Shown here: piece after piece, positions 16,521 through 63,746 of the stretch
Numbering within the stretch: position 1 is the first letter of the stretch
Layout of the letters: each line of letters starts with the position of its first letter
NCBI RefSeq assembly: GCF_006345805.1
Contig: NC_043005.1
Coordinates: 5,456,001 to 5,520,000 of the forward strand
DNA from: Octopus sinensis
Lineage: Eukaryota
Length of the DNA: 64,000 nucleotides
Direction: 5' to 3'
Notes under the pieces: generated by a model
What the model was told of the DNA's origin: nothing
Databases searched by the model: none
Seen by the model: only the letters and a program-made list of their open reading frames with translations
Translations under genes and position numbers: made by a program

Positions 16521-16605
16521 CTTCATGGGATATCTTGTAAAAAAGATGGTATGGAATGTAGTATCATGGATAACGACCACTGGAAAACGCCTCCCTTTTG
16601 GACTT
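16521..16605 (+). CDS. Sulf1: Sulf exon LHGISCKKDGMECSIMDNDHWKTPPFWT (alternative upstream acceptor at 16464/16465)
   Basis: Matches the SULF motif C..PGLTCFTHDNxHWQTAPFW. Donor T|gtaagc is phase 1, and T+AT gives Tyr with the exon at 33729. Confidence 0.92.
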
Positions 16606-17072
16606 GTAAGCCATTGTATTTAATGCTTCTGTTTATTTTCCTATTCTAGAGAATGCCTCACCTATTTTCTCTCAATCCCCATACTTCCCCCAGTAGTTTT
16701 CACTAGTGCTCTTTTATTTCTTTGCAATTATTCTTCAAAAACACTGACATGATTTTTCAGTTTAAAGTTGCTGTTTGTTTTTTTGTTTTTGCTTGCATTT
16801 TCTTCTTTTTCAATTTAAAGAAATCAATCACCTTAAGTAACATCTGTAGATATTTTGGCATCGTTTCGTAATTTAAAACATTAAATGTTTATAGTATATA
16901 ATTTTTGTTCAAAGTGGATAAGATATTTAGTGAGGTACTGTGGAGACTTTCATCCCTAAAAAAGGACATTTTTATTCAAATATAAATAATAATTAGTGTG
17001 TGTGTGTGTATATATGCATATGCATATGCATATATATATATATATATATATGCATATATATATATATATATA

Positions 17073-17117
<45 letters not shown>

Positions 17118-20100
17118 CATATACACACACGCACACTTTTTTCTGCTTGGCCAAGAATAAATAACATTTTTTAATATTTATTTTCCTATTTGTGTTTTGC
17201 TTTTTATTTTCATGTCTTGCTTCTTTGAGTGAAACTTTTTGCATCCTTTATAATTTCTGTAGTTTTTAGATTATATTTTTTCTCTGTTTTCACTCAGATT
17301 AAAACCATATCTTATCTGCTTTCGATGTTTGTAAATTTCAGATGAAACTTCCTTCTCCTATGCGAGATGGAAATTTTCACAGTTAATTTCTTTTCACATA
17401 GATTTTAATCAAAATTTTATTTATCCTACTAAAGATATTTTTCTTTTAATATTTGAGTTTCATTGTTTTTTTTTTTGTTGGTTATTTATTTTTATTTTTT
17501 TTTTGCTTTTTTTATGCTATTATATTTTTATAATTTTTTCTTAATCTTGATGAAGGGATTTTGTGCTTTTGAATTTATTTTGTTGCTTCCCTGAATTAGT
17601 TATATCAATACAAGTTTTCCAGTGGTCTTTTAACACTACAAGGTATACATTTGAATAAAAATGTTCATCCATCTATGAGGCATTCGACGACAGAGAATGT
17701 TCATCCTGCCGTTTAAAATCCACACATTTAATGCATCATGGAGTGGTTTTTGTGTTTTGATTTGAAAATATGTTGCAATAATTACAAATTTAATTATTTA
17801 ATGATTTTTAATTTAAAAAAGAACATGGCTTTCATTGAGAGCACTGTATTTATTGTTGGTTAAATATATTTAAATGTATTTCCATATATCGATATTTAAT
17901 TATTATACAATTGTTTTGGCTGGGAATGGAGTTTTGTTCCATGGTTTATTCAGTCAGAAGTGAAGACTTTTGCTAGATTTTTCTAGAGAAAAGCTTTGCA
18001 AAAGTAAGTTATCACAATTAGTTGAATAAATTGTTAGACAAGATTTGGCATTCCAATCAAAACTAATTCTATAATAAATTTGATTCTATCATTATTATAA
18101 TATAAGGTGGCATGCTGAATTGTTAATATGTCAAGCAAAACACTTAGAAGCATTTCTTCTGACTCGTTACAAAATCTGCCCAGTTACCTTTGCTGTTCAT
18201 CCTTTCCAGCGTTGATAAAATAAAGGACCAGCCAAGTACTGGAATCAATATAATCAACTTACCCCTCCCCTCAAATTTTTTTGGCCTTGTGCCAAAAATT
18301 AGAAATTCTAATTATTTAGTCTCCCTCACCTTCATCAGTATATGCTGTGATGTTATCGTTAAAATAACGAACCCAAAATTAACACTTGCATTTGTTATTA
18401 CCAAATATAGCGATTATGGTTTGGTTTTGTTTATTAGAAATGAAAAGATATTTGTTGACAAATATTCTATGGTGTTGTTTACTAACATCTTCAACAATTA
18501 TTAACTCTTGTGAAATACGTAGATGACATTTCTAAGAGTGGAATTCTGTAATTCCTGGTTCAGTATGGATTCATGTAATATGTTATGCTGGATCCTTAAA
18601 CTTGATTTTAAAAAATTGGTACTCTAAATTAAAACTATAATTATTTTTAAGAATCCAGTTGCATGTTTGAAGAATCTGATAGTTTAGGTGCAGGCCTGGC
18701 TGTATGATTGAGAACTTTACCTCCCAACCACATGGTTTTGGGTTCAGTCCACTGCGTGGCACCTTGGGTAAGTGTCATCTGTTACCTTGGACCAACCAAA
18801 GCCTTGTAAGGGGATTTTGTTGATAGAAACAGAAAGAAGCCGATTGTGTGGTGTGTGTGTGTGTTTACCTTGACCTCACATCACTCTTTTTTCCAGATAG
18901 GAAGGCTATGTAGTCACCTCTACCACACCTTCTTCAATAATACACCCCACTCAGTTGAAGATGGTCGTATTTTGTGAGTACCTGGTAACCTTACCTGTGC
19001 TACTGCCATGATAAAAAGTGCCCACTACACTCTGTCAGGTGGTCAATGTTAGAAAGAGCATCAAACTGGAGAGACCAGCCACACCAAAGCAGGTGTTGGA
19101 GCTTGACACAGTCCTCTGGCGGTCTCCTGTTGAATTTTCAATTCATACCAGCAGATATAAAAAAGGTCATTAATTGATGATGCTATATATATATATATAC
19201 ACACACCCACACATACAGTATTGAACATACAAACCCATATTCTCTTAGGCTTATAAATCACAGCTTGCCCACAAACTGGCAAAACACATAGCTTCTGTTT
19301 GTATGTTCGATATTGTTTATAACCCCCCCCCCCCGGCTGCTTCTCATTCATATTTGAACATTGTGTGTGTGCGTGTGTGTAAATATATATATATGGGGGT
19401 AAGTTTACTATCTCTTTCGTCTTGACATTGCATAATAGTTTTGAACAAGTTTCCTTATATTGCAAACAATGACCTCTGCTTCCAATCTTCCATGGAAAGA
19501 TGCCTGGTTATGGAGGAGAGATTACCTTACTTGGAAATAGCTGAGGATTAGCAACAGGAAGGATATCCAGCCATAGAAAATTTGCCTTAATGAATTGCAT
19601 CTGACTCCTGTAAGCATGGAAAAGTGGATGTTAAAGCAATGATGGTGGTATCTTCTCTCTTTGCTTTCTTAGCAATTTACCTTACATGCAAGACGACATT
19701 GCATATCTATTTGATCTTTTTCAACTCCTTTCTCCGCAGACCTCAACAGATATTTTGCTTTTCTGTTTCACTACAACTAATATGAAACTGCTTACACATA
19801 TATTTCTGACAATTTGATGCCAGCAGAGGTATTATTAGCTCTCTGGATTCCTTCTCATTTTTAACTCTTGTTCTTGTCCTTTCTCTACATCAGCAGTTCA
19901 GCTCCTTTGATAACTAACCTTGTATCTAGTATACAATCAACGTTAGAAAGAGTTCATAGTTTTCTTGCTGTTGAACGTGCCTTTAAATGGCATTTCAAGG
20001 TCTGGTGCTCTGAGTATCTTTCAAAGATTCCATTGCATCTTATGGTTCCTTATTGCATCCTGTGTTTCCTCCGTGCTCTTACAGAATGCCCTCTTTCAAG

Positions 20101-20420: not shown

Positions 20421-23209
20421 TCCTCTGTTTATGAGAAAGAAAGGAAAGAGTTTATGGATGTAGCATGGCTGGATGGCTAAGAAGTTTGCTTAGCAATCTC
20501 TAGATCTCTGGTTCAGTCTCATTGCACAACATATTTGACTTATATCTGTTATCCTAAATCTTGGGTCAACCCAAGCCTTGTGAGTAAAATTAAGTGAATC
20601 AAAAACTGTGGAAACCTGTTGGATCTACACTGTAATGCAATTCAAAGATTCAGCTCTGCCACACTGTGTTATTCTGATTGAAAATTACTTTTGGGGTACA
20701 CATGTCTGTGGAATACTCAACCACTTGCATACTAATTCATTTAACATGTAGGTCAGTTAATCAATAAACTAAGCACTTACTGTCATATTATTTGTTTAGT
20801 GGTCAAATGGGTATATATATATATATATATATAAAAGTGTGTAGGTGTAAAAGTGAATTCATTGGCTGTTTTGGGATCATTTACTTCCAAATCCTCTGCA
20901 GATGGGGATTTTTGATGTTTTTAACAGGGAAAATAAAGCTGTCCAATTAAGACAGTCAGAGTGCACCTAAATGTCAGGAATAGGATCAGATTGTCTGGGG
21001 GAAAGTCTGCAAGACTAGCAACTCATTATTAAAATAAGTTCAATCATAAATGGTCAATCATTAGCCATTTATCAAACCAGTGCATGGGGGTAGTGTGTGT
21101 GTGTGATGACTTGTATATGCACTCTTAACAGCAGATTTGCTTGTGTATATATTAATTGGTGCTGTGTTTTGTCTCTCCTTTAATGACAAATGTGTGTTCA
21201 TAACACACCTGATTCATTGGTGCAAGTGACTCTGGGACAGCCTGTCTCATCAGCCAGAGGCATCCAGGCTACTGAATCATCAACAGTTGATGCTCCTGCA
21301 TTTGCTGATCTGTCAATTGATAATGAATACTCAATTTCACAGAATGTATAAGTACTGGGACTGGTGCTATGCAAAAAGCCCCCAGTACACTCTGTGAAGC
21401 GGTTGGCATTAGAAAGGGCATCCAGCCATAGGAACCATGCCAAAACAGACAATTGGAGTCTGGTGCAGCTCCTGTCATCATCCACCCCATGCCAGCATGG
21501 AAAATAAACATTAAATGATAATGAGCGTGTGTCAAACAGGTAATGTTCTAAGGTTATCTTTTCTTCACATTATTTCTAGTAAGAGTTTTTGTGCTCAATC
21601 TTTTAAATATGTTAAACATTAGTGAAGGCTAATTCAGTCCTTGCTGCCCTACTCAGGGGAAGTATGCGACCCTGAGATACCTTCGGATCATATAGAATAG
21701 TTTCTGATATTGCAATGACTTTAATCACCACTAAAGAAGAGCTTTACAATACCACTGAAGAACTTTTTGCAGTGTCTACTCGAGGCAGAGCCTCTCTGAG
21801 GCTTAATCACACCTGTGTATATGTCTGTTAAAAGCTAAGGTTACGTATTAGAGTGGCTTCAATTATTGAACTCTGTCATCATCATTGCCCGTCTTTTAGC
21901 ATTCACTTTTCTATAGTGGAACTGGTGGCACAGGTATTCTGTGTGACATACAAATGAATCTCTTCAATCCTTAACAGCTTGTGAAACCCAACATCCTGAG
22001 ATCAAACCTCAGCCTTGCCCTCATTCTAATCAGTGAGTTACTTTTGATTCGATTCAATTTTTGTTTTCTTCCTTATTTCATAATCCTTAAGAACTACCAG
22101 AGAATCCTGTCACATTTCAGATATTCCATGTACGTGTTATGCGAGAAAATATTATTATTATTGGGCTGTTTATATTAACTTAACACCTTCCTGTTATCCT
22201 GTTAGGGTCAATGAAATAAAGTACCAGTCAAGTACTGGAGCCAATTGTATCAACTAACCTCCTCCTACTATAAAATGGCAGCTAACCCAGATGGACAACT
22301 TTAATAGAAAAGCCTATTATTTCCATTGAGCTTGTGGCAAATATATTACCAGCTTTCTGCTACCAGAATTTCCCAGAAGTGTGGAAGATTTCACCATTGA
22401 AGTGGGTAATCCAATAACTATAATATTGGTTGTTGGACCCTCATATGTTAAAATCAACAGAAGTGTTCATTTTATGTGTGTGTGCGCGCGTGTGTATGGA
22501 TGGATGGATAGACAGACAAATAGATACAAGGGACCTGAAGCAGAATAGAGAGGATATATTATTAATGAGGTTGTGAATGGCACACAAAACTGGTTGATTA
22601 ATTAACCGAATGATTATTTGTGTGATTGATTAGATAATTGGTTAAATAGTTAACCAACTGACAAATAATAATTAAAAAAAAAATAAAGAAGTGAAATTAG
22701 AACCAATGCATGTTTGTGTTTATTGGCATAATGACCCTCCGTGAGATACCACAAAATGTTTCACACGAGTTCACATCAAGAATCTTGCAAAGAAAATAGA
22801 AGTATGTGTGTGTGTCTGAAACCGACAGGGACCTATTTACATTATATATATATATATATGTATAAGAGAGAGAGGTTCACCATTGTTTATTTCAGTTGTT
22901 CAGTCAATTAGTCTGTAAGTGGGTGAATGTCTCACAAATACATGTACTCAATCACTCTGTACTCACTTGAATACAAACATCTTAACCACCCAGGCATGTC
23001 TGCATCTGTGGTGTGTGTGTGTGTGTGCACACACATACTCTCTCTCTCTCTCTCTTTTACATATGTCTAAAGTCATATTTTAGCTTTGATTTATTTATTT
23101 CTTAGACAAACAATAAATCAGCTTTTCGCTAATCCTATTCATTCTTAGCATAAACTAAAAGATTACTTATTTGCTACATCAGTCTTCCTCACAATTATTA
23201 TTATTATTA

Positions 23210-33728: not shown

Positions 33729-33871
33729 ATGGCCCATTTTGTTTCTGTTCCAATGCCAATAACAACACGTACTGGTGTATTCGTACAGTTAATGAGACTC
33801 ACAACTTCCTCTACTGTGAATTCATCACTGGCTTTATCAGTTATTATAACATGCTGGAAGACCCATATCAG
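33729..33871 (+). CDS. Sulf1: Sulf exon [47 protein letters not shown]
   Basis: Close match to the SULF1/2 C-terminal motif [46 protein letters not shown]. Acceptor ctttccag (phase 1), donor CAG|gtaaac (phase 0). Confidence 0.97.
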
Positions 33872-34360
33872 GTAAACCCATTAATTTTTCTTTTTTTTTG
33901 TTTCATGCCAGACTTGATTTGGTTATGAAATAAGAAATATCATCTCTGTATAAGAATAATTGCCAATATATTGGTTGGTTGCTATAGAGAGAGGTGGAAA
34001 GAGTTAAGATAAGAGGTGCAAAATGAGTGCACCTATTAGGCTTGGTGGCAGGCAGTGGGTTAATGAAGGCTGTGCACCCAGTGAGATTAAAATTCATTTA
34101 GATGGGAGGAGGAATAGAGGGAATAAATGACACGGTATTTTGGGGAAGGGCTATATAAATGAGAAATTTGTTTATTAAAGTTTTATTTTAAGGTAATAAA
34201 TATATTTTTCTTTTGTTTATGTGTGCATAACAGAGACAAAGATACTGTTTATCAAAACAATGACTTTTAGATACAAAAATGAACATTATTAACCATCACT
34301 TATCACATTAATATCATTGTGCATGTGTATATGTCTGTATGTATATATATATATCATCAT

Positions 34361-34861: not shown

Positions 34862-35225
34862 GTGCAATGGCCCAGTGGTTAGGGTATCAGACTTGAGGTC
34901 GTAGGATTGCAATAAACACTCACAACGCCCAGACAGGGTGTTGTGAGTGTTTATTGAGTAAAAACACTTAAAGCTCCATGAGGCTCAGGCAGGGAGTGGT
35001 GGTGAACCCTGCTGTACTCTTTCACCACAACTTTCTCTCACTCCTTCTTCCTGTTTCTGTTGTACCTCTATTTCAAAGGGGCCAGCCTTGTCACACTCTG
35101 AATGTCCTCCAGAATTACGTTAAGGGTACACATGCTCAGCCACTTGCATGTTAATTTCACAAGCAGGCTGTTCCATTGATTGGATTGACTGGAACCCTCA
35201 CTGTTGTAACTAATGGAGTGCCATA
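34862..35225 (+). mobile_element. tRNA-derived SINE (third family) with an internal 21-bp fold-back
   Basis: A-box-like TGGCCCAGTGGTTAGGG head; hairpin at 34910-34956. Confidence 0.65.
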
Positions 35226-35950: not shown

Positions 35951-36068
35951 TTGAAGAACAGCATTCATGAAATAAATTATGGTGTGCTGCAACAGCTCCA
36001 TGCCAATTTAGAAAAACTCAGAAAATGTAAAGGTGCTAAGGAATGCAGTTACGATTACCTCGATGAAA
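35951..36068 (+). CDS. Sulf1: Sulf exon LKNSIHEINYGVLQQLHANLEKLRKCKGAKECSYDYLDE
   Basis: Matches SULF LxNxVxxLxxxxLNQLHxQLMELRSCxGxKQC. Acceptor ttccag (phase 0), donor A|gtaagt (phase 1). Confidence 0.95.
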
Positions 36069-39000
36069 GTAAGTACAACTTAGTTATCACTGTAGTTTTG
36101 GTTTTTTGTTTTTTTACATTTTATTTTTGTTAAAAATGTTAAAAGAAAAGTTTCATTTTATATCTTCCATTGAATGGAAAATGAATTTTTCAGTTTTTAA
36201 ACGACTTTTATGTATTCTGACACCAGAAAAATTCTGTAATGTCAATGAACTGCATCCAATAACAGAAACCCTGTCAAAGCAGATATTGGAACTCAACACA
36301 GTTCTCCAGCTCATCAAATTCTGTCAAAGCCATCTGCACCATGCTAGCATGGAAGATGAATGTTGATCCCTGTTCTATTATTATTTAAATTCCAGTGTAT
36401 CACTTCCTATATTTAACTCCATCAAGTGTACATCTCCCGGCTGCAGGTTCAGTTTTTACTACTTACAACTCATAAGCAAAGTCAGTAAATATCAGTTCAG
36501 TTGGTTTTGAGTCTTTCAACATAGAATGTTGTGTCAAATTTAAAGCCATTTCCAACTACATGATTTCAGGTTCAGTCCCACTGCACACTACCTTGGGCAA
36601 ATGTTTTCTATTATAGTCTCAGGTCAACCAAAGCCTTGTGAATGGATTTGGTAAACAGAAACTGAATTCTGCTGAGTGTGTAGTGTGTGTACTCTTGTCT
36701 TGGCTTTGCATGATAGTTGAAAACAAGTGTCATTCATTTCCAATATTCTGTGAAAACATTTCTGGCCATATGGAAATATTACCTTGCTTTGAAATAGGAG
36801 AGGGTTGGCAACAAGAAGGGCATCAGGTTGTCAAAAATCTGCCTCAGTGTGCATTTAAAAGTGAATGCTAAGATGATGATGATGATGATAATGTGTGTCT
36901 GCCTGTCTTGACACGACACATGTAAGTGATTGTCATAGAAGTAGTGTCTTATGTTTCCAGTCTTTCATGGAAAGATGTCTGGCCACAGGAGAATATTACC
37001 TTGCTTGACAACAGGTTAGGGTTGGTGACTGGAAGTGGATGTTAAAATGATGATGTCATGTGTGTAGACATGATGTGATGGCTGTCAACAAGTGACACCA
37101 TCATACAAGCCATGTGTTTCCAGTCTTCCACAGAAACCTGTCTGGTCATGAAGAAATATAACCTTGTTCCAGAACAAGTGACGGTTCCTCATGTGACAGT
37201 AAAGACATCCAGCCATGGAAAGGCTGTATCAGGGAATTCTGCCCAACCCATGCAAGCATGGAAAAGTGAGCTTCAAACAGTGAAGATGGTGGAACAAACT
37301 GAATTGACAAATGAAATAGATGTTAATATATTTTAACTTCTCAAACCTTCCCTTAAATATGGATCTTTAATTACAAAGGAGTTTTTCTGGACTTGGAAAG
37401 ATTAAAATGGATGATAGATAGTTTTCATTTCTAACATATATTTGTGTGTGTGTGTATGAGTATATATTAATCATCTATATATTTTTCATACTAACATATA
37501 TTTCTATCTCTTTTTTCTTCATTTTTTCAGAATGGCAGAATATTTTACCTTATATTTGATAAACTCTATAAATATATTAATATTAATTTGAATATATATT
37601 TATTCAATAATTTATTTTAAAAATTGGTGAGGATTTATTTAAAACTATTTGTTAGTCTATTTAGATTGTTGTCTGTCTTTGTCATTGTTGACTCACGGTT
37701 ATATCATGCTCACACGCTCTGGCAAAAATCTCCCACAAATCACTTGCTATGTTATTGGCACCAACAAAGCATTCAACTGCTTTTGGTACAGAGCCCCAAC
37801 AGCATCACCTGCTTCTAGTTTTCTACTCCTCTTTCTATAGCTGATTGTGAAGTGAACTTCACAGCTATATGGTGTCAGGTTCAGTCCCACTACATGGATC
37901 CTTGGGCTTGCCAAGGCTTTGTGAGTGAATTTGGTAGATGGATAGTGGAAAAAAACCTGTTGTGTGCATGTGTGTGTGTATATATATATATACACACACA
38001 CACACATAGGTAATTTATGTATCTCTATGTTTGTCTCCAGGTGTTGACATCATGTAACTATTGTAAATGAGTGTCACTGTCATTTGTTTCCAATCTTCTG
38101 TAAAAACACAATCGGCCTTGGGAGAATAGGATCTTATTTGGAAACAGATGAGGGTTGGTGAAATGTGTAGCATCTGGTCATAGAAAATATACCTCAATAA
38201 ATTCTGTACAATCCATGCAAGTATGGAAAAGTGGATGTTAGAATGATGATGAGGATGATAGTCATGTTCAAACCTTGCTATGGCCACTAATTTTGTAACC
38301 CTGGACAAGGTTCAGTATTTTATTTTCTTCCAATCCAACAGCCTAACAATAACAGGTTCAACTTCAGATACGTGATTGATAGGGTTCTTTGAAACCCTCT
38401 ATCAACTCAGGTCAATATAATTGTGTTGGTTGTTTCCCCACACACTTCCTTCTGTATACTAGTGACCATCACCATTCAATATCTGTTTTAGTATGGTTTC
38501 TACAACTGGATGCCTTTCCTAATGCCAACCACTTTACAGTGTGTACTGGGTACCTTCTACATGACTCCCAGCTCTAGCAAGGTCACCAAGTAATTAGCAA
38601 AGCGAGGCCCCTAACTCAGTGGGGAAGTGGTATTGAGGCAGGTGATTCTGTGTCAGTGGGAAGAATAAGAGAGGGACGACAGACACAGGGGTCTTGGAGT
38701 AGAGGAGATACATTGCTTCCTCAGCTGAAAGAGAGAAAATGGTTGTGACAATGTTACAGGATGATGAATGACACTTTAAGGTTAATTCTGTGGCCCCGTA
38801 TTTCAGTACCGGTCACACATCATTATGGTACAGTTATGGCACACAAACATTTTGGAATGTATCTCCTCCCCACCACCACCACCACCACTTCCACCAAAAA
38901 TGCCACCTGAGTTTTAAACACGTAACAGTTAGCATCTCTTCTACCACTCTATCTGCTATTTTGAACTGTAAAATTGTACACCTGCCTTGCTCATTTTTGC

Positions 39001-39544: not shown

Positions 39545-40135
39545 TCTCTTACTCTTCTTCACACCTTCAGGATGGTCTTGGGCAATGACTCATGGTACAT
39601 TTTATAGCCAAAATATGATCAGTTTGTGGACTTGATTCTCAATAATAAGTGTCTTTGAGCTTTAAGCTTTTCTAGCACTGCAGTATTTGTTATCCTGTCT
39701 TCCCAGCTTATCTTGCTTAATCTGTGAAAGATCCACTTCTCAAAACTTTCCTTTCATTTCCCATCAATATGTGCATTATCCAAGTTCCTGTCCAGTAGAG
39801 GAGAATTGGTATAATATAACAGTTTACTAGCCTCACTTTTAGATGCATGTTATCTTTCCAGGTGAAGATCCTTTTCATTCTTATAAATGTTGTTTTAGCC
39901 TTATTTATTCTTATTTCTTGATTTAGTATTTGTTCTAAATACTTGAAGTTTTTTCCACTTGTTCCGGCTTCTGCTCATCTACCTTTATATTTGCTTCTTT
40001 CTGTTCTGTCTTATTAATAACCTTTGTCATTTTTACATTCATATTTAGGATTTTCTTCTCACAAAGCTCTTTCACATCAACAGTTTCTCATAATTCTTCC
40101 TTGTTGCCTGCCAACACTGCTGTGTTATCAGCATG
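39545..40135 (-). mobile_element. Degraded RTE/BovB-like LINE RT C-terminal fragment
   Basis: Minus-strand relics KNFKYL, RINKAKTTFIRMKRIFT, KVRLVNCYIIPILLY and RLSKISWEDRITNTAVL. Confidence 0.75.
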
Positions 40136-40221
40136 TCTAATATTGTTTATGTTCAAGCCATTGGCTGCGACTCCTACATACTCACACACACACACATATA
40201 TATATATATATACACACACCG

Positions 40222-42079
40222 CTTGTGGTACCAGTGCCGGTGGCACACAAGAATCCATCCGAACGTGGCCGTAGTCAGTACCGCATCACTCGCCATCGTG
40301 CTGTGGGCACATAACAAACACCATCCGGTCGTGGCCGTTCGCCAGCCTCATCTAGCACCTGTGTCGGTGGCACATAAAAACACCTTCCGAAGACCCGGCA
40401 AGACTAGTCAGGCCATAAACCATGGCCCCTACCTGGGACGTAGTCAGTCCACCTGTGCATACCTTCCTCCTTGTGATACTTGTGAAGGCCTGTTGAGGCA
40501 AGTGAAGATCAAAATCAAAATCAAATCAAAACAAATCAAAATAGATGAACATCAATGGAATTTGTATCTTTGTGGTACCAGTGCCGGTGGCACACAAGAG
40601 AAAACCATCCGAAAGTGGCCGTAGCCAGTACCGCATCACTGGCCATCGTGCTGTGGGCACATAACAAACACCATCCGGTCGTGGCCGTTCGCCAGCCTCA
40701 TCTAGCACCTGTGTCGGTGGCACATAAAAACACCATCCGAAGACCCGGCAAGACTAGTCAGGCCATAACCCATGGCCCCTACCTGGGACATAGTCAGTCC
40801 ACCTGTGCATACCTTCCTTCTTGTGACACTTGTGAAGACCTGTTGAGGCAAGTGAAAATCAAATCAAAACAAATCAAAATAGATGAACATCAATGGAATC
40901 TGTATCTTTGTGGTACCAGTGCCGGTGGCACACACTTTGTGGTACCAGTGCCGGTGGCACACAAGAGAACCATCCGAACGTAGCCGTAGCCAGTTCCGCA
41001 TCGACCGGCCTCCGTGCTGTGGGCACGTAACAAACACCATCCGATCATGGCCGTTCGCCAGCCTCATCTGGCACCTGTGTCGGTGGCACATAAAAACACC
41101 TTCCGAAGACCCGGCAAGACTAGTCAGTCCACCTGTGCATACCTTCCTTCTTGTGACACTTGTGAAGACCGGTTGAGGCAAGTGAAAATCAAATCAAATC
41201 AAATCAAAATAGACAAAATAGATGAACATCAATGGAATTTGTATCTTGTGGTACCAGTGCCTGTGGCACACAAGAAATCCATCAGTGCCGTAGTCAGTGC
41301 GGTGGGCACATGACAAACACCATCCGATCGTGGCCGTTCGCCAGCCTCATCTAGCACCTGTGTCGGTGGCACATAAAAACACCATCCGAAGACCCGGCAA
41401 GACTAGTCAGGCCATAACCCATGGCCCCTACCTGGGACGTAGTCAGTCCACCTGTGCATACCTTCCTTCTTGTGACACTTGTGAAGACCTGTTGAGACAA
41501 GTGAAAATCAAAACAAATCAAAATAGATGAACATCAATGGAATTTGTATCTTTGTGGTACCAGTGCCGGTGGCACGTGGCACATAAGAAAACCATCCGAA
41601 CGTGGCCGTAGCCAGTACCGCATCGACTGGCCTCCGTGCTGTGGGCACGTAACAAGCACCATCCGATCGTGGCCGTTTGCCAGCCTCATCTGGCACCTGT
41701 GTCGGTGGCACATAAAAACACCATCCGAGCGTGGCCGTCTGCCAGCCTCGTCTGGCACCTGTGTCGGTGGCACATAAAAAACACCATCCGAGCGTGGCCG
41801 TCTGCCAGCCTCGTCTGGCATCTGTGTCGGTGGCACATTAAAAAACACCATCCGAGCGTGGCCGTTTGCCAGCCTCGTCTGGCACCTGTGTCGGTGGCAC
41901 ATAAAATCACCCACTACACTCTCGGAGTGGTTGGCGTTAGGAAGGGCATCCAGCTGTAGAAACACTGCCAGATCTGACTGGACTGGTGCAGCTTCCGGGC
42001 TCCCCAGACCCCAGTTGAACCGTCCAACCCATGCTAGCATGGAAAGCGGACGTTAAATGATGATGATGATGATGATGAT
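40222..42079 (+). repeat. Hierarchical tandem array of an RTE LINE 3' UTR (about five ~310-350 bp units, ~63-bp subrepeats, (GAT)n tail)
   Basis: Units start TTGTGGTACCAGTGCC at about 40222, 40570, 40907 (27-29 bp local duplication at about 40936), 41246 and 41551. Units are reverse-complement homologous to 34361-34800; tail at about 42056-42079. Confidence 0.9.
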
Positions 42080-45015: not shown

Positions 45016-48000
45016 TAGGAGAAGGTTTCAGTATGAGGTGGTGCAATTTATTCTATTTTGTTTGTTAGTTAGTTATTTTCCCAACTATTCTTGATGCTTC
45101 CCATAAACCATAATTGCCTCTTTTACTCTTGGATTTTCATTTCTAAGACTATAATTGTTTTTTTATGCAATAATTTCTTTTTTTTTTTCACTTTTACAGG
45201 AGAAAAAATTTCAATTTTTTTTTTTTTTTTTTGTTAATGAAAAATCTTAAAAGATTTCTTCATTGTATATTTTTACAGCATGTCAATATTTCATGTTTAA
45301 AGAAAGTGGTATAGACAGCTTTTAGAGAGGAGAGCACTGGGACTAGATGCTTTACTGTAAATTTGTTTGCTCCATCACTAATATTGTTCAAAGTTTGAAA
45401 TCTGAATTCCCACCAGGGCCAACTTTGCCTTTCACCCTTTCTTGAAGGTTGATAAAATAAAGTACCAGTATTAGACTAGAGTCAAATTAATTGAATTTAC
45501 TTGAAAAAAAAAGCAAAAAAAAAAAAGCAAGAATTTGATATTTCATGTAAGGAGGACTGGAAACTAATCTTTTAATGTCACTATCTTTTACTCATCCACC
45601 ATCCATCCATCCATTTATCTATCTGTGTCTTCTTTTTTTCCTTCCTTCTATTCCCTTGTCCAATAACAGCAATTTGTCAGTAAATATTGTGTTGAAATAA
45701 TGATTGATCAAAACGGTTTTGTTTGGTATGAAACATTAAGAAAAATCTATTTTTGTTTTTATCAACTTCACTGAAAATCTTTTATTTACTTGTCTTCTTA
45801 ACCCACTGACTTTTGTTTTTATATCCATTATAAAGAGTCTTTAAAACTTACTATCTCTATATGGAAATATAAGTTACTTCTGTACCAGTTTATATCTTGG
45901 CTGTTCACTCAGAAATTTAATATATTCACGGTTACATTCTTGCTAGAAGAAACTATTAGAGTGTGACTCGAGTGACTAAGGTCACCACTTGCTGTTAAAT
46001 TAGATGTTTTACGAATTAGTCTATCTATAAACTATCATAACTTTAAAAAAAAATTTGACTTCCTCCTTACCTATTGTTGAATTCATATCAAAAATACGAT
46101 CCTTTTGAGAACCAACCTACAGAAGAATGTTCAAAGTTCATTAATAAAAAAAACTGCTTGTTTTAAAGTGTTTATATACAAATTAAAACTCATCATTTTT
46201 ATGCAACTTTTGGTTAATTATGTTCCAAACATCAGCTTAATACCAATAAATATTTTAGTAAATATTTTGTTAGTAAATCATTCTAGATCCTTTAATAATT
46301 TAAAGAAATTAATTATAAAATATTGTCATAGAAGGCTTAAATTTTCTTTCCAGCATACAAATAATTACAATTTAGCAACACCTTTCCAGTAAGTTCCATA
46401 ATTATCTACCTTAGTTTTATGTTGGATCATAGATTGAAGCCCTAAGAAAAATGAATTATCAAGGTTAAAATTCGCAAGACGCTCTTCTTTTCTTTGTATC
46501 CATAATTTTCTGGCTAAAAGTATCTTTCCCCAGAAATTATATAATATCTAGAGAATAATTTATTTAAATGAATCTAAACAATAACATATTCGTTCATTCT
46601 CAGTGCATTCTGGCAGATTTGAACACCAATATCTGATTGTTGTGTTCTTTTAATGGCAACAATCAGATATTCCTATTGAATCTGCCAGAACATATTAAGA
46701 ATGAATTATTGTTTGGATCCACACTGTTCTATAGGCACTCCATCAAGTTTTGTTTGGTAAACATTAGCGGAAACCAGCAAATGATTTGTTTGCTGATTCC
46801 TATGAACAAGAGCCAGTGCACTTGTTAAATTCATTGGTTCAGTGGGGTAGCTTTGACTGATGAGACATGATAAGTTTGAAACACCAAAGTAATCTCATAG
46901 TTCCCTTACACCAGTGAATTGTATGTGTTATGAGCACACATTGTCTAAAGGGAGATGTTCCCTCATGCCAAACAACAGTAATCAGACATTCACATTCGAA
47001 TTTGCCAGAACATAATAAGAATGAATAGAAATTAAGAAAATTATCTAAATTAAAAATTCCATCAAAAGTTCAGGTTAGTTAATATTTTCCAAAACCAGTT
47101 TATTAACGACAATTATTTTACTAAATTCTTCATTATTTTCAAAATTGATACAAAAGCAATGTTTCAACAGAAATATGATAACAAAACACTTACACAGACT
47201 TATGTTCAAAGGTATCCCAGCCATGACTATCCAGTCACTTTTTTGATCACAGTAAACCCCAGATTACATCATCCAATGATGGTAGACTTTGGTTTAACCC
47301 TTTTGCACGAGATTGCTCCTAGTTCTACGATACAAACTTCCTGTTTTTAAAGTGATCTAAATTAAACACTTCCATCAGAATTTCCTGTTAGTTTATGCTT
47401 CAAACATCAACTTAATAATGGCAAAGTTATTTTAGTAAATTCTTCATTACTGTCAAGATTAATTGATACGGAGGCAGCGTTTCAAAAGAAATATGATAAC
47501 AAAAGGGTTAAAGGAAGTATTAAATTTAAGTACTGTAAAGGTGATGATTGTTTGATCTGAAATCTTGAGATTCTCGTTTCAGACTTTAGTTTATCTGACG
47601 AGGTGTTAAAGAAATTAAGATAGTATCAGCACATGACGAGGCTATATTAAATTCAACATGGTGGAGAGCTGTTATCTTATAGCTATGAAGAACTATTCGG
47701 ATTTATGCTAACAATTTGGTTGCACAAATCATCATACTTAGGAACCCTAAGTAACTCTAAATGTAAAATCGGTTTTTATAACACTACTACAATTAGTCTA
47801 ATACTAGTTTGCTTTAAATAGCAAAACTGCAAAAAAGTTCTCTCTCTGATGGTCTGTTCCTCATTACAGTGTATAATGAATGTTTTTAGGTGACAGATTT
47901 AAGATTAAACCAAAATATGATAAAATAAATGAAAAGCAACATCAAAAAATGCAATTAAGTCCTAATTACTTAATATCAGTTAGTTCTTTGATCTTTCTAT

Positions 48001-50439: not shown

Positions 50440-51350
50440 AGCTTCCGCTACCTAAGTGACCAAGCCTGTAGTGGGAACCACTAGAATAAGAATAGCCTGG
50501 GCAAAGTTTAGAAAGCTCCTACCTCTACTGGTGACAAAGAGCCCCTTGCTCAGAGTGAAAGGTAGATTGTACCATGCATGTGTGGGAACTGCCATGCTTC
50601 ACGGCAGTGAAACATGGGCCATGACTGCTGAAGACATGCAAAGGTTCGAAAGAAACGAAGCTAGCATAATCCGCTGGATGTGTAATGTCAGTGTGCAGAC
50701 ACGACAGAGAGAAATGTTGGGCATAAGAAGCATCAGATGTGGTGTGCAAGAGAGACATTTGCATTGGTATGGTCATGTACCATGGATGGATGAGGAGAGC
50801 TGTGTGACGAAATGCCATTCCCAAACATGGAATGAGGTGGTGAAGCATGATCTTTGAACGTTGGGCCTCACAGAGGCAATGACAAAAGACTGAGATCTCT
50901 GGAGGTATGCTGTGACTGAGAACATCCGGCAAATAAAGTGAGATCACAGCTGTAACCTACACCAGTGTTGCATAACCAGCCCACTCAAAGTACCTTGGAT
51001 CGTAGGGTAACATGCTATGCTTGAGAAGACCTATTGAGTCAAGTATATCAACTTCAAAATCAAATCAAATCAAATCACAATCAAATGGAAATTGTGGTTG
51101 TGATTCCCGTGCAGGTAGCACGTAAAAAGCAGCATCCGAACATGGTCAATGCCAGCCCCCTCTGGCCCCTGTGCTGGTGGCATGTAAAAAGCACCCACTA
51201 CACTCTCGGAGTGATTGGTAGTAGGAAGGGCATCCAGCTGTAGAAACACTGCCAGATCAGACTGGGGCCTGGTGCAGCCACCTGGCTTCCCAGACCCCGG
51301 TCGAACCATCCAACCCATGCCAGCATGGAAAATAGACGTTAAACGATGAT
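50440..51350 (+). mobile_element. 5'-truncated RTE-clade LINE (RT C-terminus plus 3' UTR)
   Basis: TRIRIAWAKFRKLLPLLVTK..VKGRLYHACVGTAMLHGSETWAM..RHLHWYGHV..TWNEVVKHDL, then a 3' UTR ending GTTAAACGATGAT. Confidence 0.9.
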
Positions 51351-58446: not shown

Positions 58447-59359
58447 CTGAAATGGAGATGAAAATTGAAACCAGAATAAGAAAAATATGTAAATTTGAAA
58501 TCTGTAATTGGTAGATTTTATCTGTTGATATCATAGGCATGGTTGCTATAGATACACAGATGGCTGTGTGGTTATGGAGTTTGCTTCCTAGATTGGTGTT
58601 TTGGTGTTCAGCCCAAGGCCAATTGAAGCCTTGTAAGTGGATTTAGTAGACAAAAATTGAAGAAGTTTGTCTATGTATGTATGTATGTATGAGTGTGTAT
58701 GTATACATGTGTATATGCTTGTGTCCAGTTATCTTTACATCATATGAAGTTGTAAATGAGCGTCACTGTCATACAACCAGTGTCATTTATTTCCCGCCAT
58801 TAGGAAATATTACTTTGCTTGGAAACAGATGAGGGTTGGCAACCAACCATAGAAGGTCTGCTTCAACAAATACCATTTGGCTCTTTATAAAGAAAGCAAT
58901 GATGATGATATAATTTAACCAGTGGTCAATTCTGATCAAGGAACAAACATATGAACTAGAGTGTTCTAGCTGTAACCATTTTGGATATAAAAAAACCCAG
59001 AATGGTTACAGCTACGACACTAGTTCATTTCTAGTGTTTGAAATATGGAGTGATATTCTGGTATTGTCGTGTTTAAGATATGGAATGGTTGGTATTCCAG
59101 TATTCTGATTTCTATTTCACATGTTAATTGTTGTGGAGTTCTAGATTGTTTAACATACAGCTAAAGTTGTTATGCAGTTATATCTGTATGTAATGCTAAA
59201 AGTATGATTGTGATATTGCCAGCGTAGAATGCTTTGTAGATATTTTAAAGTTGAGTTGAAATGGAGAGGATGAAAAAATGTGAAAAGCACGATTGATTTT
59301 GGAAGTATCCAGGACAAGTCTTTAAGCAATTTTCCATAGATCTGAGATAATGTATTTGG

Positions 59360-61852: not shown

Positions 61853-62698
61853 AATAAAGTTTTAGGTAAATAAGGAGATTCTCACTTATACCTCTACACA
61901 TACACACATATATATACAATCACACATATACATATCTACACATACACATATATATGTATACATACACACACTCACTTGCATACACGTATACACACATGTA
62001 TATATACACACACGACCACACATACATATACACACAGAAAAATATATATATACACATACACACACATCTACTCACATACACGCATACACACACAAATCCA
62101 TACACACACATGCGCGCACACACAGCACACTAGTCCCTATATACACATATATACACATACACACATATATATACACCCACACATACACATACATACACAT
62201 ATATATACATACATACACATACATATACACATATACATACATACACATATATATATATATATACACATATATATACATATGTGTACCCATGCATACCTAC
62301 ACATACACACATATATATATATACATATACAAATACAGACCCATTCCCTAATTTTAATTTTATTATCTTCGTTTATTACTTTTGTTATCTTTGGCCGCTT
62401 GGTCACAAACATCTTGGCTATGACAGCCAGACCATTTATCCGGCTACTGGAAAACAATTACTCATTCACTCACGCACACTCTTTAGCACGTACACTCACT
62501 CATTCGTACACTCATACGCATACACGCACGCACGCGTTATATTCATACATACATACATCTACATACATTCACGTATATACACATACGTACGCGTACCTAC
62601 AGATTCATGTCTACACTCTTAGAGGGCTAGTCTATACATATACACCAATAAATATAAATACACACACATACATGTACACCTACATACAAATACATACA

Positions 62699-62745
<47 letters not shown>

Positions 62746-62862
62746 TACGCGTACCTACAGATTCATGTCTACACTCTTAGAAGGCTAGTCTATACATATA
62801 CACCCATAAATATAAATACACACACATACATACATGTACACCTACATACAAATACATACATG

Positions 62863-62923
<61 letters not shown>

Positions 62924-63746
62924 TACATATATATACATATATATATTTATACTAACATGCATACTCAAAAAATAAGTAAATAGTAAATATATATACACGC
63001 GCAGTTATTCATACGTGAATGTATGTAGATGTATGTATGTATGAATATAACGCGTGCGTGCGTGTATGCGTATGAGTGTACGAATGAGTGAGTGTACGTG
63101 CTAAAGAGTGTGCGTGAGTGAATGAGTAATTGTTTTCCAGTAGCCGGATAAATGGTCTGGCTGTCATAGCCAAGATGTTTGTGACCAAGCGGCCAAAGAT
63201 AACAAAAGTAATAAACGAAGATAATAAAATTAAAATTAGGGAATGGGTCTGTATTTGTATATGTATATATATATGTGTGTATGTGTAGGTATGCATGGGT
63301 ACACATATGTATATATATGTGTATATATATATATATATGTGTATGTATGTATATGTGTATATGTATGTGTATGTATGTATATATATGTGTATGTATGTGT
63401 ATGTGTGGGTGTATATATATGTGTGTATGTGTATATATGTGTATATAGGGACTAGTGTGCTGTGTGTGTGCGCATGTGTGTGTATGGATTTGTGTGTGTA
63501 TGCGTGTATGTGAGTAGATGTGTGTGTATGTGTATATATATATTTTTCTGTGTGTATATGTATGTGTGGTCGTGTGTGTATATATACATGTGTGTATACG
63601 TGTATGCAAGTGAGTGTGTGTATGTATACATATATATGTGTATGTGTAGATATGTATATGTATGTGTGATTGTATATATATGTGTGTATGTGTAGAGGTA
63701 TAAGTGAGAATCTCCTTATTTACCTAAAACTTTATTCCCCCCCTTT

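What the first reader, a model, noticed from the sequence alone, without database searches (positions are those of the whole stretch)
46593..47025. Densely base-paired ~430-nt block in the putative Sulf 3' UTR
Stacked inverted repeats are visible. There is an outer imperfect stem 46593-46619/46679-46705 enclosing a perfect 15-bp stem AATATCTGATTGTTG/CAACAATCAGATATT (46628-46642/46657-46671), and a hairpin GGAAACCAGCAAA/TTTGCTGATTCC near 46770-46800. A stem AATTCATTGGT/ACCAGTGAATT (46828-46838/46910-46920) encloses further pairing. A second copy of the outer right arm at 46995-47025 gives the left arm two alternative partners (a switch, or TIRs of a decayed element). Coleoids edit and regulate RNA heavily, so this is a candidate ADAR substrate, miRNA hairpin or UTR structure.
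Basis: partly seen in the sequence, partly recalled or inferred. Interest (0 to 1): 0.7.

Follow-up and report, generated by a model that had tools for sequence, protein, structure and literature searches.

The report
Repeat-derived DNA hairpin downstream of Sulf
The strong 113-base hairpin is real, but it is made of three nearby copies of the end of a dispersed octopus repeat, so it is most likely ordinary repeat debris and not an evolved RNA switch, microRNA or editing site.

Summary
Only part of the block exceeds chance. The 113-nt hairpin 46593-46705 (extendable to 46569-46721) has z = -9.6 on the + strand and -9.2 on the - strand. The third arm copy at 46975-47025 is also real. The 269-nt interior is marginal (z = -1.65 / -2.6).

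The equal folding of both strands points to a DNA palindrome, not a strand-specific RNA.

The decisive result is that 46750-47044, the interior plus right arm R2, belongs to a dispersed repeat family. One copy lies at an unrelated Octopus vulgaris locus (L021 17970-18260, E 9e-12). Another lies in the window at 21104-21302 on the - strand (E 7e-14). L, R1 and R2 are three copies of that family's 3'-terminal ~65-80 nt.

The block sits among other repeats, and two other hairpins of similar strength occur in the same 64 kb. It lies 10.5 kb beyond the last recognisable Sulf coding exon, so 3' UTR status is unproven. Rfam gives no match. The proposed switch is 17 kcal/mol off balance.

Verdict: neutral repeat-derived palindrome. 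It would be a promiscuous ADAR target only if transcribed. Low interest.

The parts
46569..46643 (-). Arm L. An inverted copy of the 3'-terminal module of the dispersed repeat family, which I call 'Fam-R' here.
   Evidence: A profile HMM (nhmmer) of the five aligned arm modules, L itself included, matches 46567-46648 on the - strand at E 7e-19. A 2-copy HMM of the long Fam-R copies, built without L or R1, matches 46581-46647 on the - strand at E 5e-6. Complementarity to R1 extends to 46569 / 46721 (I5).
46644..46656 (.). Unpaired 13-nt spacer (apical loop) between L and R1.
46657..46721 (+). Arm R1. A direct-orientation fragment of the Fam-R 3' module. It lacks 8 nt that L and the other family copies keep.
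   Evidence: The arm HMM, R1 itself included, matches 46652-46723 at E 6e-15. The five-way alignment shows the 8-nt gap. The 2-copy HMM, built without R1, gives E 1.6e-6.
46750..47044 (+). Long copy of Fam-R (about 295 nt).
   Evidence: Homologous to the O. vulgaris locus L021 17970-18260: 62% identity, BLAST E 9e-12, Smith-Waterman score 63 against shuffles of 17.2 +/- 2.7.
46975..47025 (+). Arm R2, the 3' module of the long Fam-R copy. It is 84% identical to R1 over the 50 aligned arm columns (87% in the 47-nt BLAST match) and 73% complementary to L.
46770..46800 (.). Small hairpin inside the long Fam-R copy.
   Evidence: z = -3.2 / -4.5, chosen after the fact.
46924..46940 (.). Short palindrome TGTGTTATGAGCACACA. 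It is a family feature and is kept in the 21-kb copy as GTGTGTTATGAACACACA.
   Evidence: Alignments.
21104..21302 (-). Second Fam-R copy in the window, inside a Sulf intron. It ends next to a (CA)n run.
   Evidence: The 2-copy HMM, built without this copy, gives E 6.9e-14. Alignment.
47037..47200 (+). Context: a 5'-truncated copy of an abundant interspersed repeat (piggyBac-type MITE family). It starts 12 nt after R2.
   Evidence: 78% identical to 47349-47504, E 4e-28. Family copies are listed.
35951..36068 (+). Context: the last recognisable Sulf coding exon (..LKNSIHEINYGVLQQLHANLEKLRKCKGAKECSYDYLDE). It ends at a GTAAGT donor.
   Evidence: tblastn with Elysia and Lingula Sulf fragments, E 2e-10. 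Translation and sequence.

Best explanation
The block is a DNA-level palindrome built from repeat debris. It is not an evolved RNA structure.

A dispersed repeat family, 'Fam-R', has a unit of at least about 295 nt with a conserved 3' terminal module. One long copy of it sits at 46750-47044 and ends in R2. Two further short copies of only the 3' module lie just upstream. They are head to head, 13 nt apart: L is inverted and R1 is direct. Together they form a 113-nt imperfect hairpin, or 153 nt with the shared flank.

The origin I favour (inference, about 0.5 of the total) is a local inverted duplication of the module together with about 10 nt of its flank, by fold-back or template switching during replication or repair. 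After that the copies decayed neutrally.

Shown here:
- the repeats and their homology to non-orthologous loci;
- the equal folding of both strands.

Inferred:
- the order of the duplication events;
- the absence of function.

If a transcript crosses the block, either strand would form an interrupted ~49-bp duplex. By established knowledge of ADAR enzymes, such a duplex would be edited promiscuously, as inverted repeat pairs are in other animals.
For: 1. Fam-R is dispersed.
- Window 46750-47044 matches O. vulgaris L021 17970-18260. The flanks are not collinear.
- An HMM of those two copies finds a third copy at window 21104-21302 (-), E 7e-14. It also finds R1 and L as fragments.
- That makes three long copies in 227 kb sampled.

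2. Five arm modules align over roughly 65-80 nt.
- L, R1 and R2 are 73-84% alike over the aligned arm columns. By eye in the five-way alignment, they resemble each other more than they resemble the L021 and 21-kb modules. That points to a local origin.
- L and R1 share about 10 nt (TTTRGATYCA) beyond the point where the two other copies stop resembling them.

3. The hairpin folds equally on both strands: -50.1 / -48.7 kcal/mol. The substitutions in the first variable block give 2 G.U pairs on one strand and 3 on the other (my own pairing of the arm sequences shown).

4. The surroundings are a repeat mosaic.
- An intact piggyBac-type MITE lies at 47298-47507, flanked by TTAA.
- About a dozen matches to that family occur in the window, and more in the O. 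vulgaris loci.

5. Hairpins of this strength are common here.
- 58925-59056: MFE -50.9, z = -9.35.
- 34870-34996: MFE -51.4.

6. There is no Rfam match.

7. Octopus genomes are about 66% repeats, including PiggyBac, MITE and many unclassified families (PMC13282606).
Against: - L differs from R1 in two tight blocks, while three stems of 8, 12 and 15 bp are perfect. The sum of the three longest perfect runs is reached in only 0.9% of random placements of the same 10 differences. Selection for pairing, or gene conversion between the arms, could produce that pattern.
- No RNA data were available, so transcription, editing and small-RNA production are untested.
- No orthologous locus could be obtained, so conservation of the hairpin is untested.
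- The family end, and therefore the 'shared flank' argument, rests on only two outside copies.
- The copy-number extrapolation rests on three copies.
Confidence: 0.78

Rival explanations
1. The block is, or was, a mobile non-autonomous DNA transposon (a MITE or foldback element). Either the 433-nt unit has L and R2 as terminal inverted repeats, or the 113-153-nt L-loop-R1 unit is an internally deleted derivative that moved by cut and paste.
For: - L and R2 are 51-nt arms, 73% complementary, at the two ends of the block (I1).
- L and R1 form a near-complete palindrome like deletion-derived MITEs.
- The arm belongs to a multi-copy family.
- Real MITEs lie right next to it.
Against: - No target-site duplication is visible at 46593/47025 or at 46569/46721 (read).
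- The three long family copies show no inverted arm at their 5' ends. The best candidate has E 0.26 in a 480-nt search space.
- The L-loop-R1 unit was not found anywhere else in 227 kb.
- L and R1 appear to share flank sequence beyond the family end.
Confidence: 0.1
2. The hairpin is a functional structure in an extended Sulf 3' UTR. It could be a specific ADAR editing substrate, or an L:R1 / L:R2 alternative-pairing switch that regulates the mRNA.
For: - It has the same strand orientation and lies downstream of Sulf.
- The long duplex has perfect stems of 8, 12 and 15 bp.
- L can pair with R2: duplex energy -40.8 kcal/mol against -49.7 for R1.
- The differences cluster in internal loops, p about 0.009.
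- Inverted repeats forming dsRNA are the main editing targets across Metazoa (PMC5625713, title seen).
Against: - The block is 10.5 kb past the last recognisable coding exon, with a 2-kb SINE-like tandem array in between. No terminal exon was found.
- The alternative fold is 17 kcal/mol worse. In the ensemble, about 38 L-R1 pairs are expected against 2.6 L-R2 pairs.
- There is no strand asymmetry.
- All three arms are repeat copies.
- Comparable hairpins occur elsewhere in the window.
Confidence: 0.06
3. The 113-nt hairpin is a repeat-derived precursor of a microRNA or an endogenous siRNA, in the way human mir-548 derives from Made1 palindromes.
For: - A stable hairpin with a 12-nt unpaired apical loop and a UGUG at the apical junction (sequence).
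- TE-derived palindromes are known sources of miRNAs (my own knowledge).
Against: - The stem is about 49 bp, or about 70 bp with the flank, with three internal loops. That is longer than the ~35-bp stem of canonical animal pri-miRNAs (my own knowledge).
- Both strands fold equally.
- Rfam's best match is mir-963 at 22.6 bits against a gathering score of 90.
- The prior is poor: three comparable hairpins in 64 kb, if that rate held genome-wide, would mean on the order of 1e5 such hairpins, against a few hundred miRNA loci.
Confidence: 0.04

Closest known systems
Inverted pairs of dispersed repeats that form dsRNA (for example inverted Alu pairs in human introns and 3' UTRs)
   Same: Two copies of one dispersed repeat in opposite orientation give an intramolecular duplex on either strand. 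Such duplexes are the bulk targets of promiscuous A-to-I editing (my own knowledge; PMC5625713).
   Different: The arms here are only the terminal ~65-80 nt of the repeat, not ~300 nt. The spacer is 13 nt. Transcription is unverified. The pair probably arose by local duplication, not by two separate insertions.
Made1-type palindromic MITEs and the mir-548 family
   Same: A short, almost complete palindrome made from the ends of a repeat, able to fold as a hairpin.
   Different: There is no TA or other target-site duplication. The long members of this family have no inverted 5' arm. There is no small-RNA evidence. The stem is longer and more interrupted than in a pre-miRNA.
piggyBac-type MITEs of octopus (neighbouring family; PiggyBac and MITE classes are listed for O. 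vulgaris in PMC13282606)
   Same: Small, non-coding, multi-copy, AT-rich elements in the same neighbourhood.
   Different: The neighbour at 47298-47507 has TTAA duplications and CCCTTTTG...CAAAAGGG ends. The finding has neither of these and shows no significant similarity to that family.
5'-truncated retroposon copies (SINE or LINE 3' ends)
   Same: The Fam-R copies share a 3' end, differ in how far they reach 5', and stop near simple repeats: (CA)n at 21.09 kb, and (TA)n(CA)n after L021 18283.
   Different: No tRNA-like head, no poly-A tail and no target-site duplication was identified. Only three long copies were seen, so the class stays open.

Membership tests
Dispersed (interspersed) repeat family | Homologous copies at non-orthologous loci | tested here: met
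   Window 46750-47044 matches L021 17970-18260 (E 9e-12, Smith-Waterman z about 17) and window 21104-21302 (-) (E 7e-14). The flanks are not collinear.
MITE / TIR DNA transposon | Terminal inverted repeats at both ends of family members | tested here: not met
   At this locus L and R2 are 73% complementary. The three long family copies have no significant inverted arm at their 5' ends.
MITE / TIR DNA transposon | Target-site duplication flanking the element | tested here: not met
   No direct repeat (TA, TTAA or 8 bp) is present at 46593/47025 or 46569/46721 (read). By contrast the neighbouring MITE has clear TTAA duplications.
MITE / TIR DNA transposon | Many copies of the same unit with the same ends | tested here: inconclusive
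   The L-loop-R1 unit was found once in 227 kb. No cephalopod genome could be searched whole.
Animal microRNA precursor | Stem of about 35 bp with flanking single strands and an apical loop of at least 10 nt | tested here: not met
   The loop is 12 nt unpaired, but the stem is about 49 bp with three internal loops, and it extends to about 70 bp.
Animal microRNA precursor | Match to a curated miRNA family | tested here: not met
   The best Rfam match is mir-963 at 22.6 bits against a gathering score of 90, E 0.97. Nothing reaches gathering score in the whole window.
Animal microRNA precursor | Discrete mature and star small-RNA reads | not testable with these tools
   No small-RNA data are available.
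ADAR substrate (repeat-derived dsRNA) | Intramolecular duplex of roughly 30 bp or more | tested here: met
   About 38 of the 51 L-arm positions are paired with R1 in the predicted fold, including perfect runs of 15, 12 and 8 bp. MFE is -50.1 kcal/mol.
ADAR substrate (repeat-derived dsRNA) | Lies in a transcript, with A-to-G mismatches in RNA reads | not testable with these tools
   No RNA-seq data. Look-ups of window ORFs in public assemblies found nothing.
Sulf 3' UTR | Contiguous with the terminal coding exon of Sulf | tested here: inconclusive
   The last recognisable exon, 35951-36068, ends at a GT donor. No terminal exon or C-terminal motif was found downstream. The block is 10.5 kb further on, past a 2-kb SINE-like tandem array at 40.1-42.0 kb.
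RNA conformational switch | Two mutually exclusive folds of comparable free energy | tested here: not met
   -128 kcal/mol against -111 kcal/mol with R1 blocked. Expected L-R2 pairs in the ensemble are 2.6, against 37.9 for L-R1.

The most novel reading that the evidence does not exclude
The L/R1 hairpin is a repeat-derived element that octopods have co-opted. It could be a lineage-specific small-RNA (miRNA or endo-siRNA) precursor, or an editing-dependent regulatory duplex in a very long Sulf 3' UTR. In either case the three perfect stems would be kept by selection, which would explain why L's differences cluster in two internal loops.
Probability: 0.04. Interest if true: 0.5.

Novelty: new member of a known kind. 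Interest (0 to 1): 0.12.

Why it matters
It matters little in itself. It is a worked example of how inverted copies of a repeat end create very stable hairpins (z about -9) in a repeat-rich cephalopod genome.

Two other hairpins of the same strength occur within the same 64 kb. So hairpin stability alone is a poor predictor of miRNA, editing-site or UTR-structure function in this genome.

The practical lesson is that scans for structured RNA in cephalopods need repeat masking and a both-strand control before a hairpin is flagged.

If the small chance of co-option were true, it would be one more case of a transposon-derived regulatory RNA in a lineage known for heavy RNA editing and for miRNA expansion.

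Tried and rejected
1. A second, degenerate left arm inside the interior (D9). Smith-Waterman against shuffles was not significant.

2. A ~315-nt tandem repeat that would explain R1 and R2.
- MAFFT of four units gave 60% mean column identity, driven by the neighbouring MITE family.
- The similarity after R1 and R2 alone is not significant: 36 of 500 shuffles reach it.
- Rejected as the main explanation.

3. Target-site duplications of TA, TTAA or 8-bp hAT type at several candidate ends. None was found (by eye).

4. The R arm as a diverged 5' end of the piggyBac-type MITE. By my own count of aligned positions, identity was about 32-35%, near random for this AT-rich sequence. Rejected.

5. Pattern scans of public collections.
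- Metagenomes: 0 hits, then 12 hits.
- Prokaryote genomes: 3 hits.
- The metagenome hits, which I compared with the element, match only the fixed pattern letters and are chance. The three prokaryote-genome hits were not followed up; that number is about what chance would give for the pattern.
- These collections are not expected to hold cephalopod DNA.

6. Copy number through predicted proteins. The 63-aa ORF across R1 found nothing. The SINE-ORF control showed that the database holds O. vulgaris gene models only. That is how O. vulgaris DNA could then be sampled.

7. L006 was taken for a possible orthologous locus because P0028 resembles the window ORF at 41534-42040. It shares only repeats with the window.

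8. Search for the terminal Sulf exon.
- A W.GW.G motif scan found none.
- tblastn with six C-terminal tails of Sulf homologues found nothing beyond 36070.

9. A TIR inside the L021 copy was not significant. An R1-like piece upstream of the L021 copy was not significant either.

10. Bacterial promoter and terminator scan: irrelevant and at background level.

11. Pfam on ten nearby ORFs gave no families. My by-eye impression that 50456-50857 looks like reverse transcriptase is therefore unsupported.

Full report
**What is there**

The window is AT-rich (36% GC) and looks like an octopod genome. It shares SINE-like and MITE families with Octopus vulgaris GCA_951406725.2.

The core is an imperfect palindrome with these parts:
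- left arm L, 46593-46643;
- a 13-nt spacer;
- right arm R1, 46657-46705;
- complementarity that continues outward to 46569 / 46721 (I5);
- a third arm, R2, at 46975-47025, which is a direct copy of R1. It is 87% identical over 47 nt and 73% complementary to L.

**Is it more than chance?**

The 113-nt hairpin clearly is.
- MFE is -50.1 kcal/mol with z = -9.6. The reverse strand gives -48.7 and z = -9.2.
- Only 1 of 3195 sliding 113-nt windows folds at least as low.

The interior 46706-46974 is not clearly so.
- z = -1.65 on the + strand and -2.6 on the - strand.
- The 46825-46923 stem-loop has z = -2.5 / -1.4.

For the whole 433-nt block, z = -5.95 / -5.88, but 33 of 636 windows fold at least as low in absolute energy. 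The 'densely paired 430-nt block' therefore reduces to one palindrome plus a third arm.

**Strand symmetry and background**

Both strands fold equally well. The substitutions in the first variable block give 2 G.U pairs on one strand and 3 on the other (my own pairing of the arm sequences). This is what a DNA palindrome looks like. It is not what an RNA selected on one strand looks like.

Outside microsatellites, the window holds six perfect stems of at least 12 bp with loops of at most 80 nt. Shuffles give 0-3. Two of the six belong to this hairpin. Two others are hairpins of the same strength:
- 58925-59056, MFE -50.9, z = -9.35;
- 34870-34996, MFE -51.4.

Such hairpins are therefore frequent in this stretch of genome.

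**What the arms are**

No cephalopod genome could be searched directly. A control search with a SINE-derived ORF showed that the protein collection holds O. vulgaris gene models. That allowed eight 20-kb pieces of O. vulgaris DNA to be fetched.

- One of them, L021, contains a homologue of window 46750-47044 at 17970-18260. Identity is 62% and BLAST E is 9e-12. The Smith-Waterman score is 63 against 17.2 +/- 2.7 for shuffles. The flanks are not collinear.
- An HMM of these two copies finds a third copy in the window itself at 21104-21302 on the - strand, E 7e-14. That copy lies in a Sulf intron.
- The same HMM recognises R1 (E 1.6e-6) and L (E 5e-6) as fragments of the family's 3' end.
- The five arm modules align over roughly 65-80 nt.

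So R2 is the 3' end of a long copy (about 295 nt) of a dispersed repeat, 'Fam-R'. R1 and L are two extra copies of that terminal module only.

Leaving out the index copy, there are two further copies in 227 kb. That suggests thousands of copies genome-wide, with a very wide error. This is an extrapolation and assumes a genome of about 2.7 Gb, which is my own knowledge.

**Which class of repeat?**

This stays open.
- The long copies show no inverted arm at their 5' ends.
- No target-site duplication is visible.
- The copies stop near simple repeats.

These features fit a retroposon-like element better than a MITE, but three copies are too few to decide.

**How the hairpin arose (inference)**

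- L, R1 and R2 are 73-84% alike over the aligned arm columns. In the five-way alignment they look closer to each other than to the L021 and 21-kb modules (by eye).
- L and R1 share about 10 nt beyond the point where the family similarity ends.
- L keeps 8 nt of family sequence that R1 has lost.

The simplest history is one Fam-R insertion followed by local duplication of its terminal module. One duplication was inverted, with a 13-nt spacer, as fold-back or template-switch repair produces. Neutral decay followed. A mobile L-loop-R1 MITE is the main alternative.

**Surroundings**

- R2 is followed 12 nt later by a 5'-truncated copy of an abundant ~160-210-nt repeat.
- An intact member of that repeat family at 47298-47507 has TTAA duplications and CCCTTTTG / CAAAAGGG ends, so it is a piggyBac-type MITE.
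- About a dozen matches to that family lie in the window, and others lie in the O. vulgaris loci.
- O. vulgaris is reported to be about 66% repeats, with PiggyBac, MITE and many unclassified families (PMC13282606).

3' UTR:
- Sulf exons on the + strand were found at 16551-16613, 33731-33874 and 35951-36068.
- The last of these ends at a GTAAGT donor, so a further exon may exist. None was found.
- The block lies 10.5 kb downstream, past a 2-kb SINE-like tandem array.
- UTR status is unproven and, in my view, unlikely.

Switch:
- L can pair with R2 (duplex -40.8 against -49.7 kcal/mol for R1).
- The fold with R1 blocked is 17 kcal/mol worse.
- The ensemble holds about 38 L-R1 pairs against 2.6 L-R2 pairs.

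miRNA:
- Rfam gives only mir-963 at 22.6 bits against a gathering score of 90, and nothing at gathering score in the whole window.
- The stem is too long and too interrupted for a canonical precursor.

ADAR:
- The duplex is long enough.
- If any transcript crosses it, promiscuous editing is expected, as for inverted repeats across Metazoa (PMC5625713).
- That would be a generic property of the duplex, not evidence of function.

**One loose end**

The ten L/R1 differences fall in two tight blocks between perfect stems of 8, 12 and 15 bp. That pattern is reached in 0.9% of random placements. Seven of the nine substitutions are transitions. This could reflect two complex mutation events, gene conversion between the arms, or weak selection for pairing. 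It keeps a small probability on the co-option reading.

**Verdict**

This is a real and strong hairpin, but it is an ordinary product of repeat duplication in a repeat-rich genome. It is a new instance of a known kind and of low interest.

Noticed in passing
window 47294-47511: An intact 210-nt piggyBac-type MITE at 47298-47507, with ends CCCTTTTG...CAAAAGGG and TTAA duplications on both sides. About a dozen matches to its family lie in the window, often as tandem pairs: 20.2k, 25.3-25.6k, 27.2k, 33.2-33.6k, 46.1-46.3k, 47.04-47.2k, 53.0k, 59.4k. More copies lie in the O. vulgaris loci L020, L023 and L024.
   Followed up: partly
window 58925-59056: A hairpin as strong as the finding: MFE -50.9 kcal/mol, z = -9.35, about 36 bp nearly perfect with a 12-nt loop. 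Its shape is closer to a pre-miRNA than the finding's. No copy was found in 143 kb of O. vulgaris sample.
   Followed up: partly
window 34870-34996: A 21-bp hairpin (17-bp perfect core at 34910-34926 / 34940-34956) in the GC-rich stretch next to a SINE-like repeat copy.
   Followed up: no
window 61898-63687: A large inverted duplication with arms of about 680 nt, 97-99% identical (61898-62576 / 63011-63687), around a ~430-nt spacer. It is rich in TA/TG/CA microsatellite. It could be a real palindrome or an assembly artefact.
   Followed up: no
window 40100-42050; also about 10.7k, 21.35-21.53k, 34.3-34.6k, 51.1-51.35k, 60.4k: A SINE-like repeat, here in a 2-kb tandem array with periods of 330 and 63 nt. 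The O. vulgaris annotation carries 'hypothetical predicted proteins' (P0021-P0028) that are translations of this repeat. These are probably annotation artefacts.
   Followed up: partly
window 35951-36135: The last recognisable Sulf exon ends at a consensus GTAAGT donor. Read-through would add a hydrophobic T-rich tail before a stop near 36131. The true C-terminal exon was not found in the window.
   Followed up: partly
window 46601-46607 and 46620-46627 (arm L): The differences specific to arm L cluster in two blocks and are mostly transitions. The three stems between them are perfect (p about 0.009). This is unexplained.
   Followed up: partly
L021 18247-18261: The O. vulgaris Fam-R copy ends in a small palindrome of its own, TCATCA-AAA-TGATGA. 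A (TA)n(CA)n run follows at 18283-18332.
   Followed up: no
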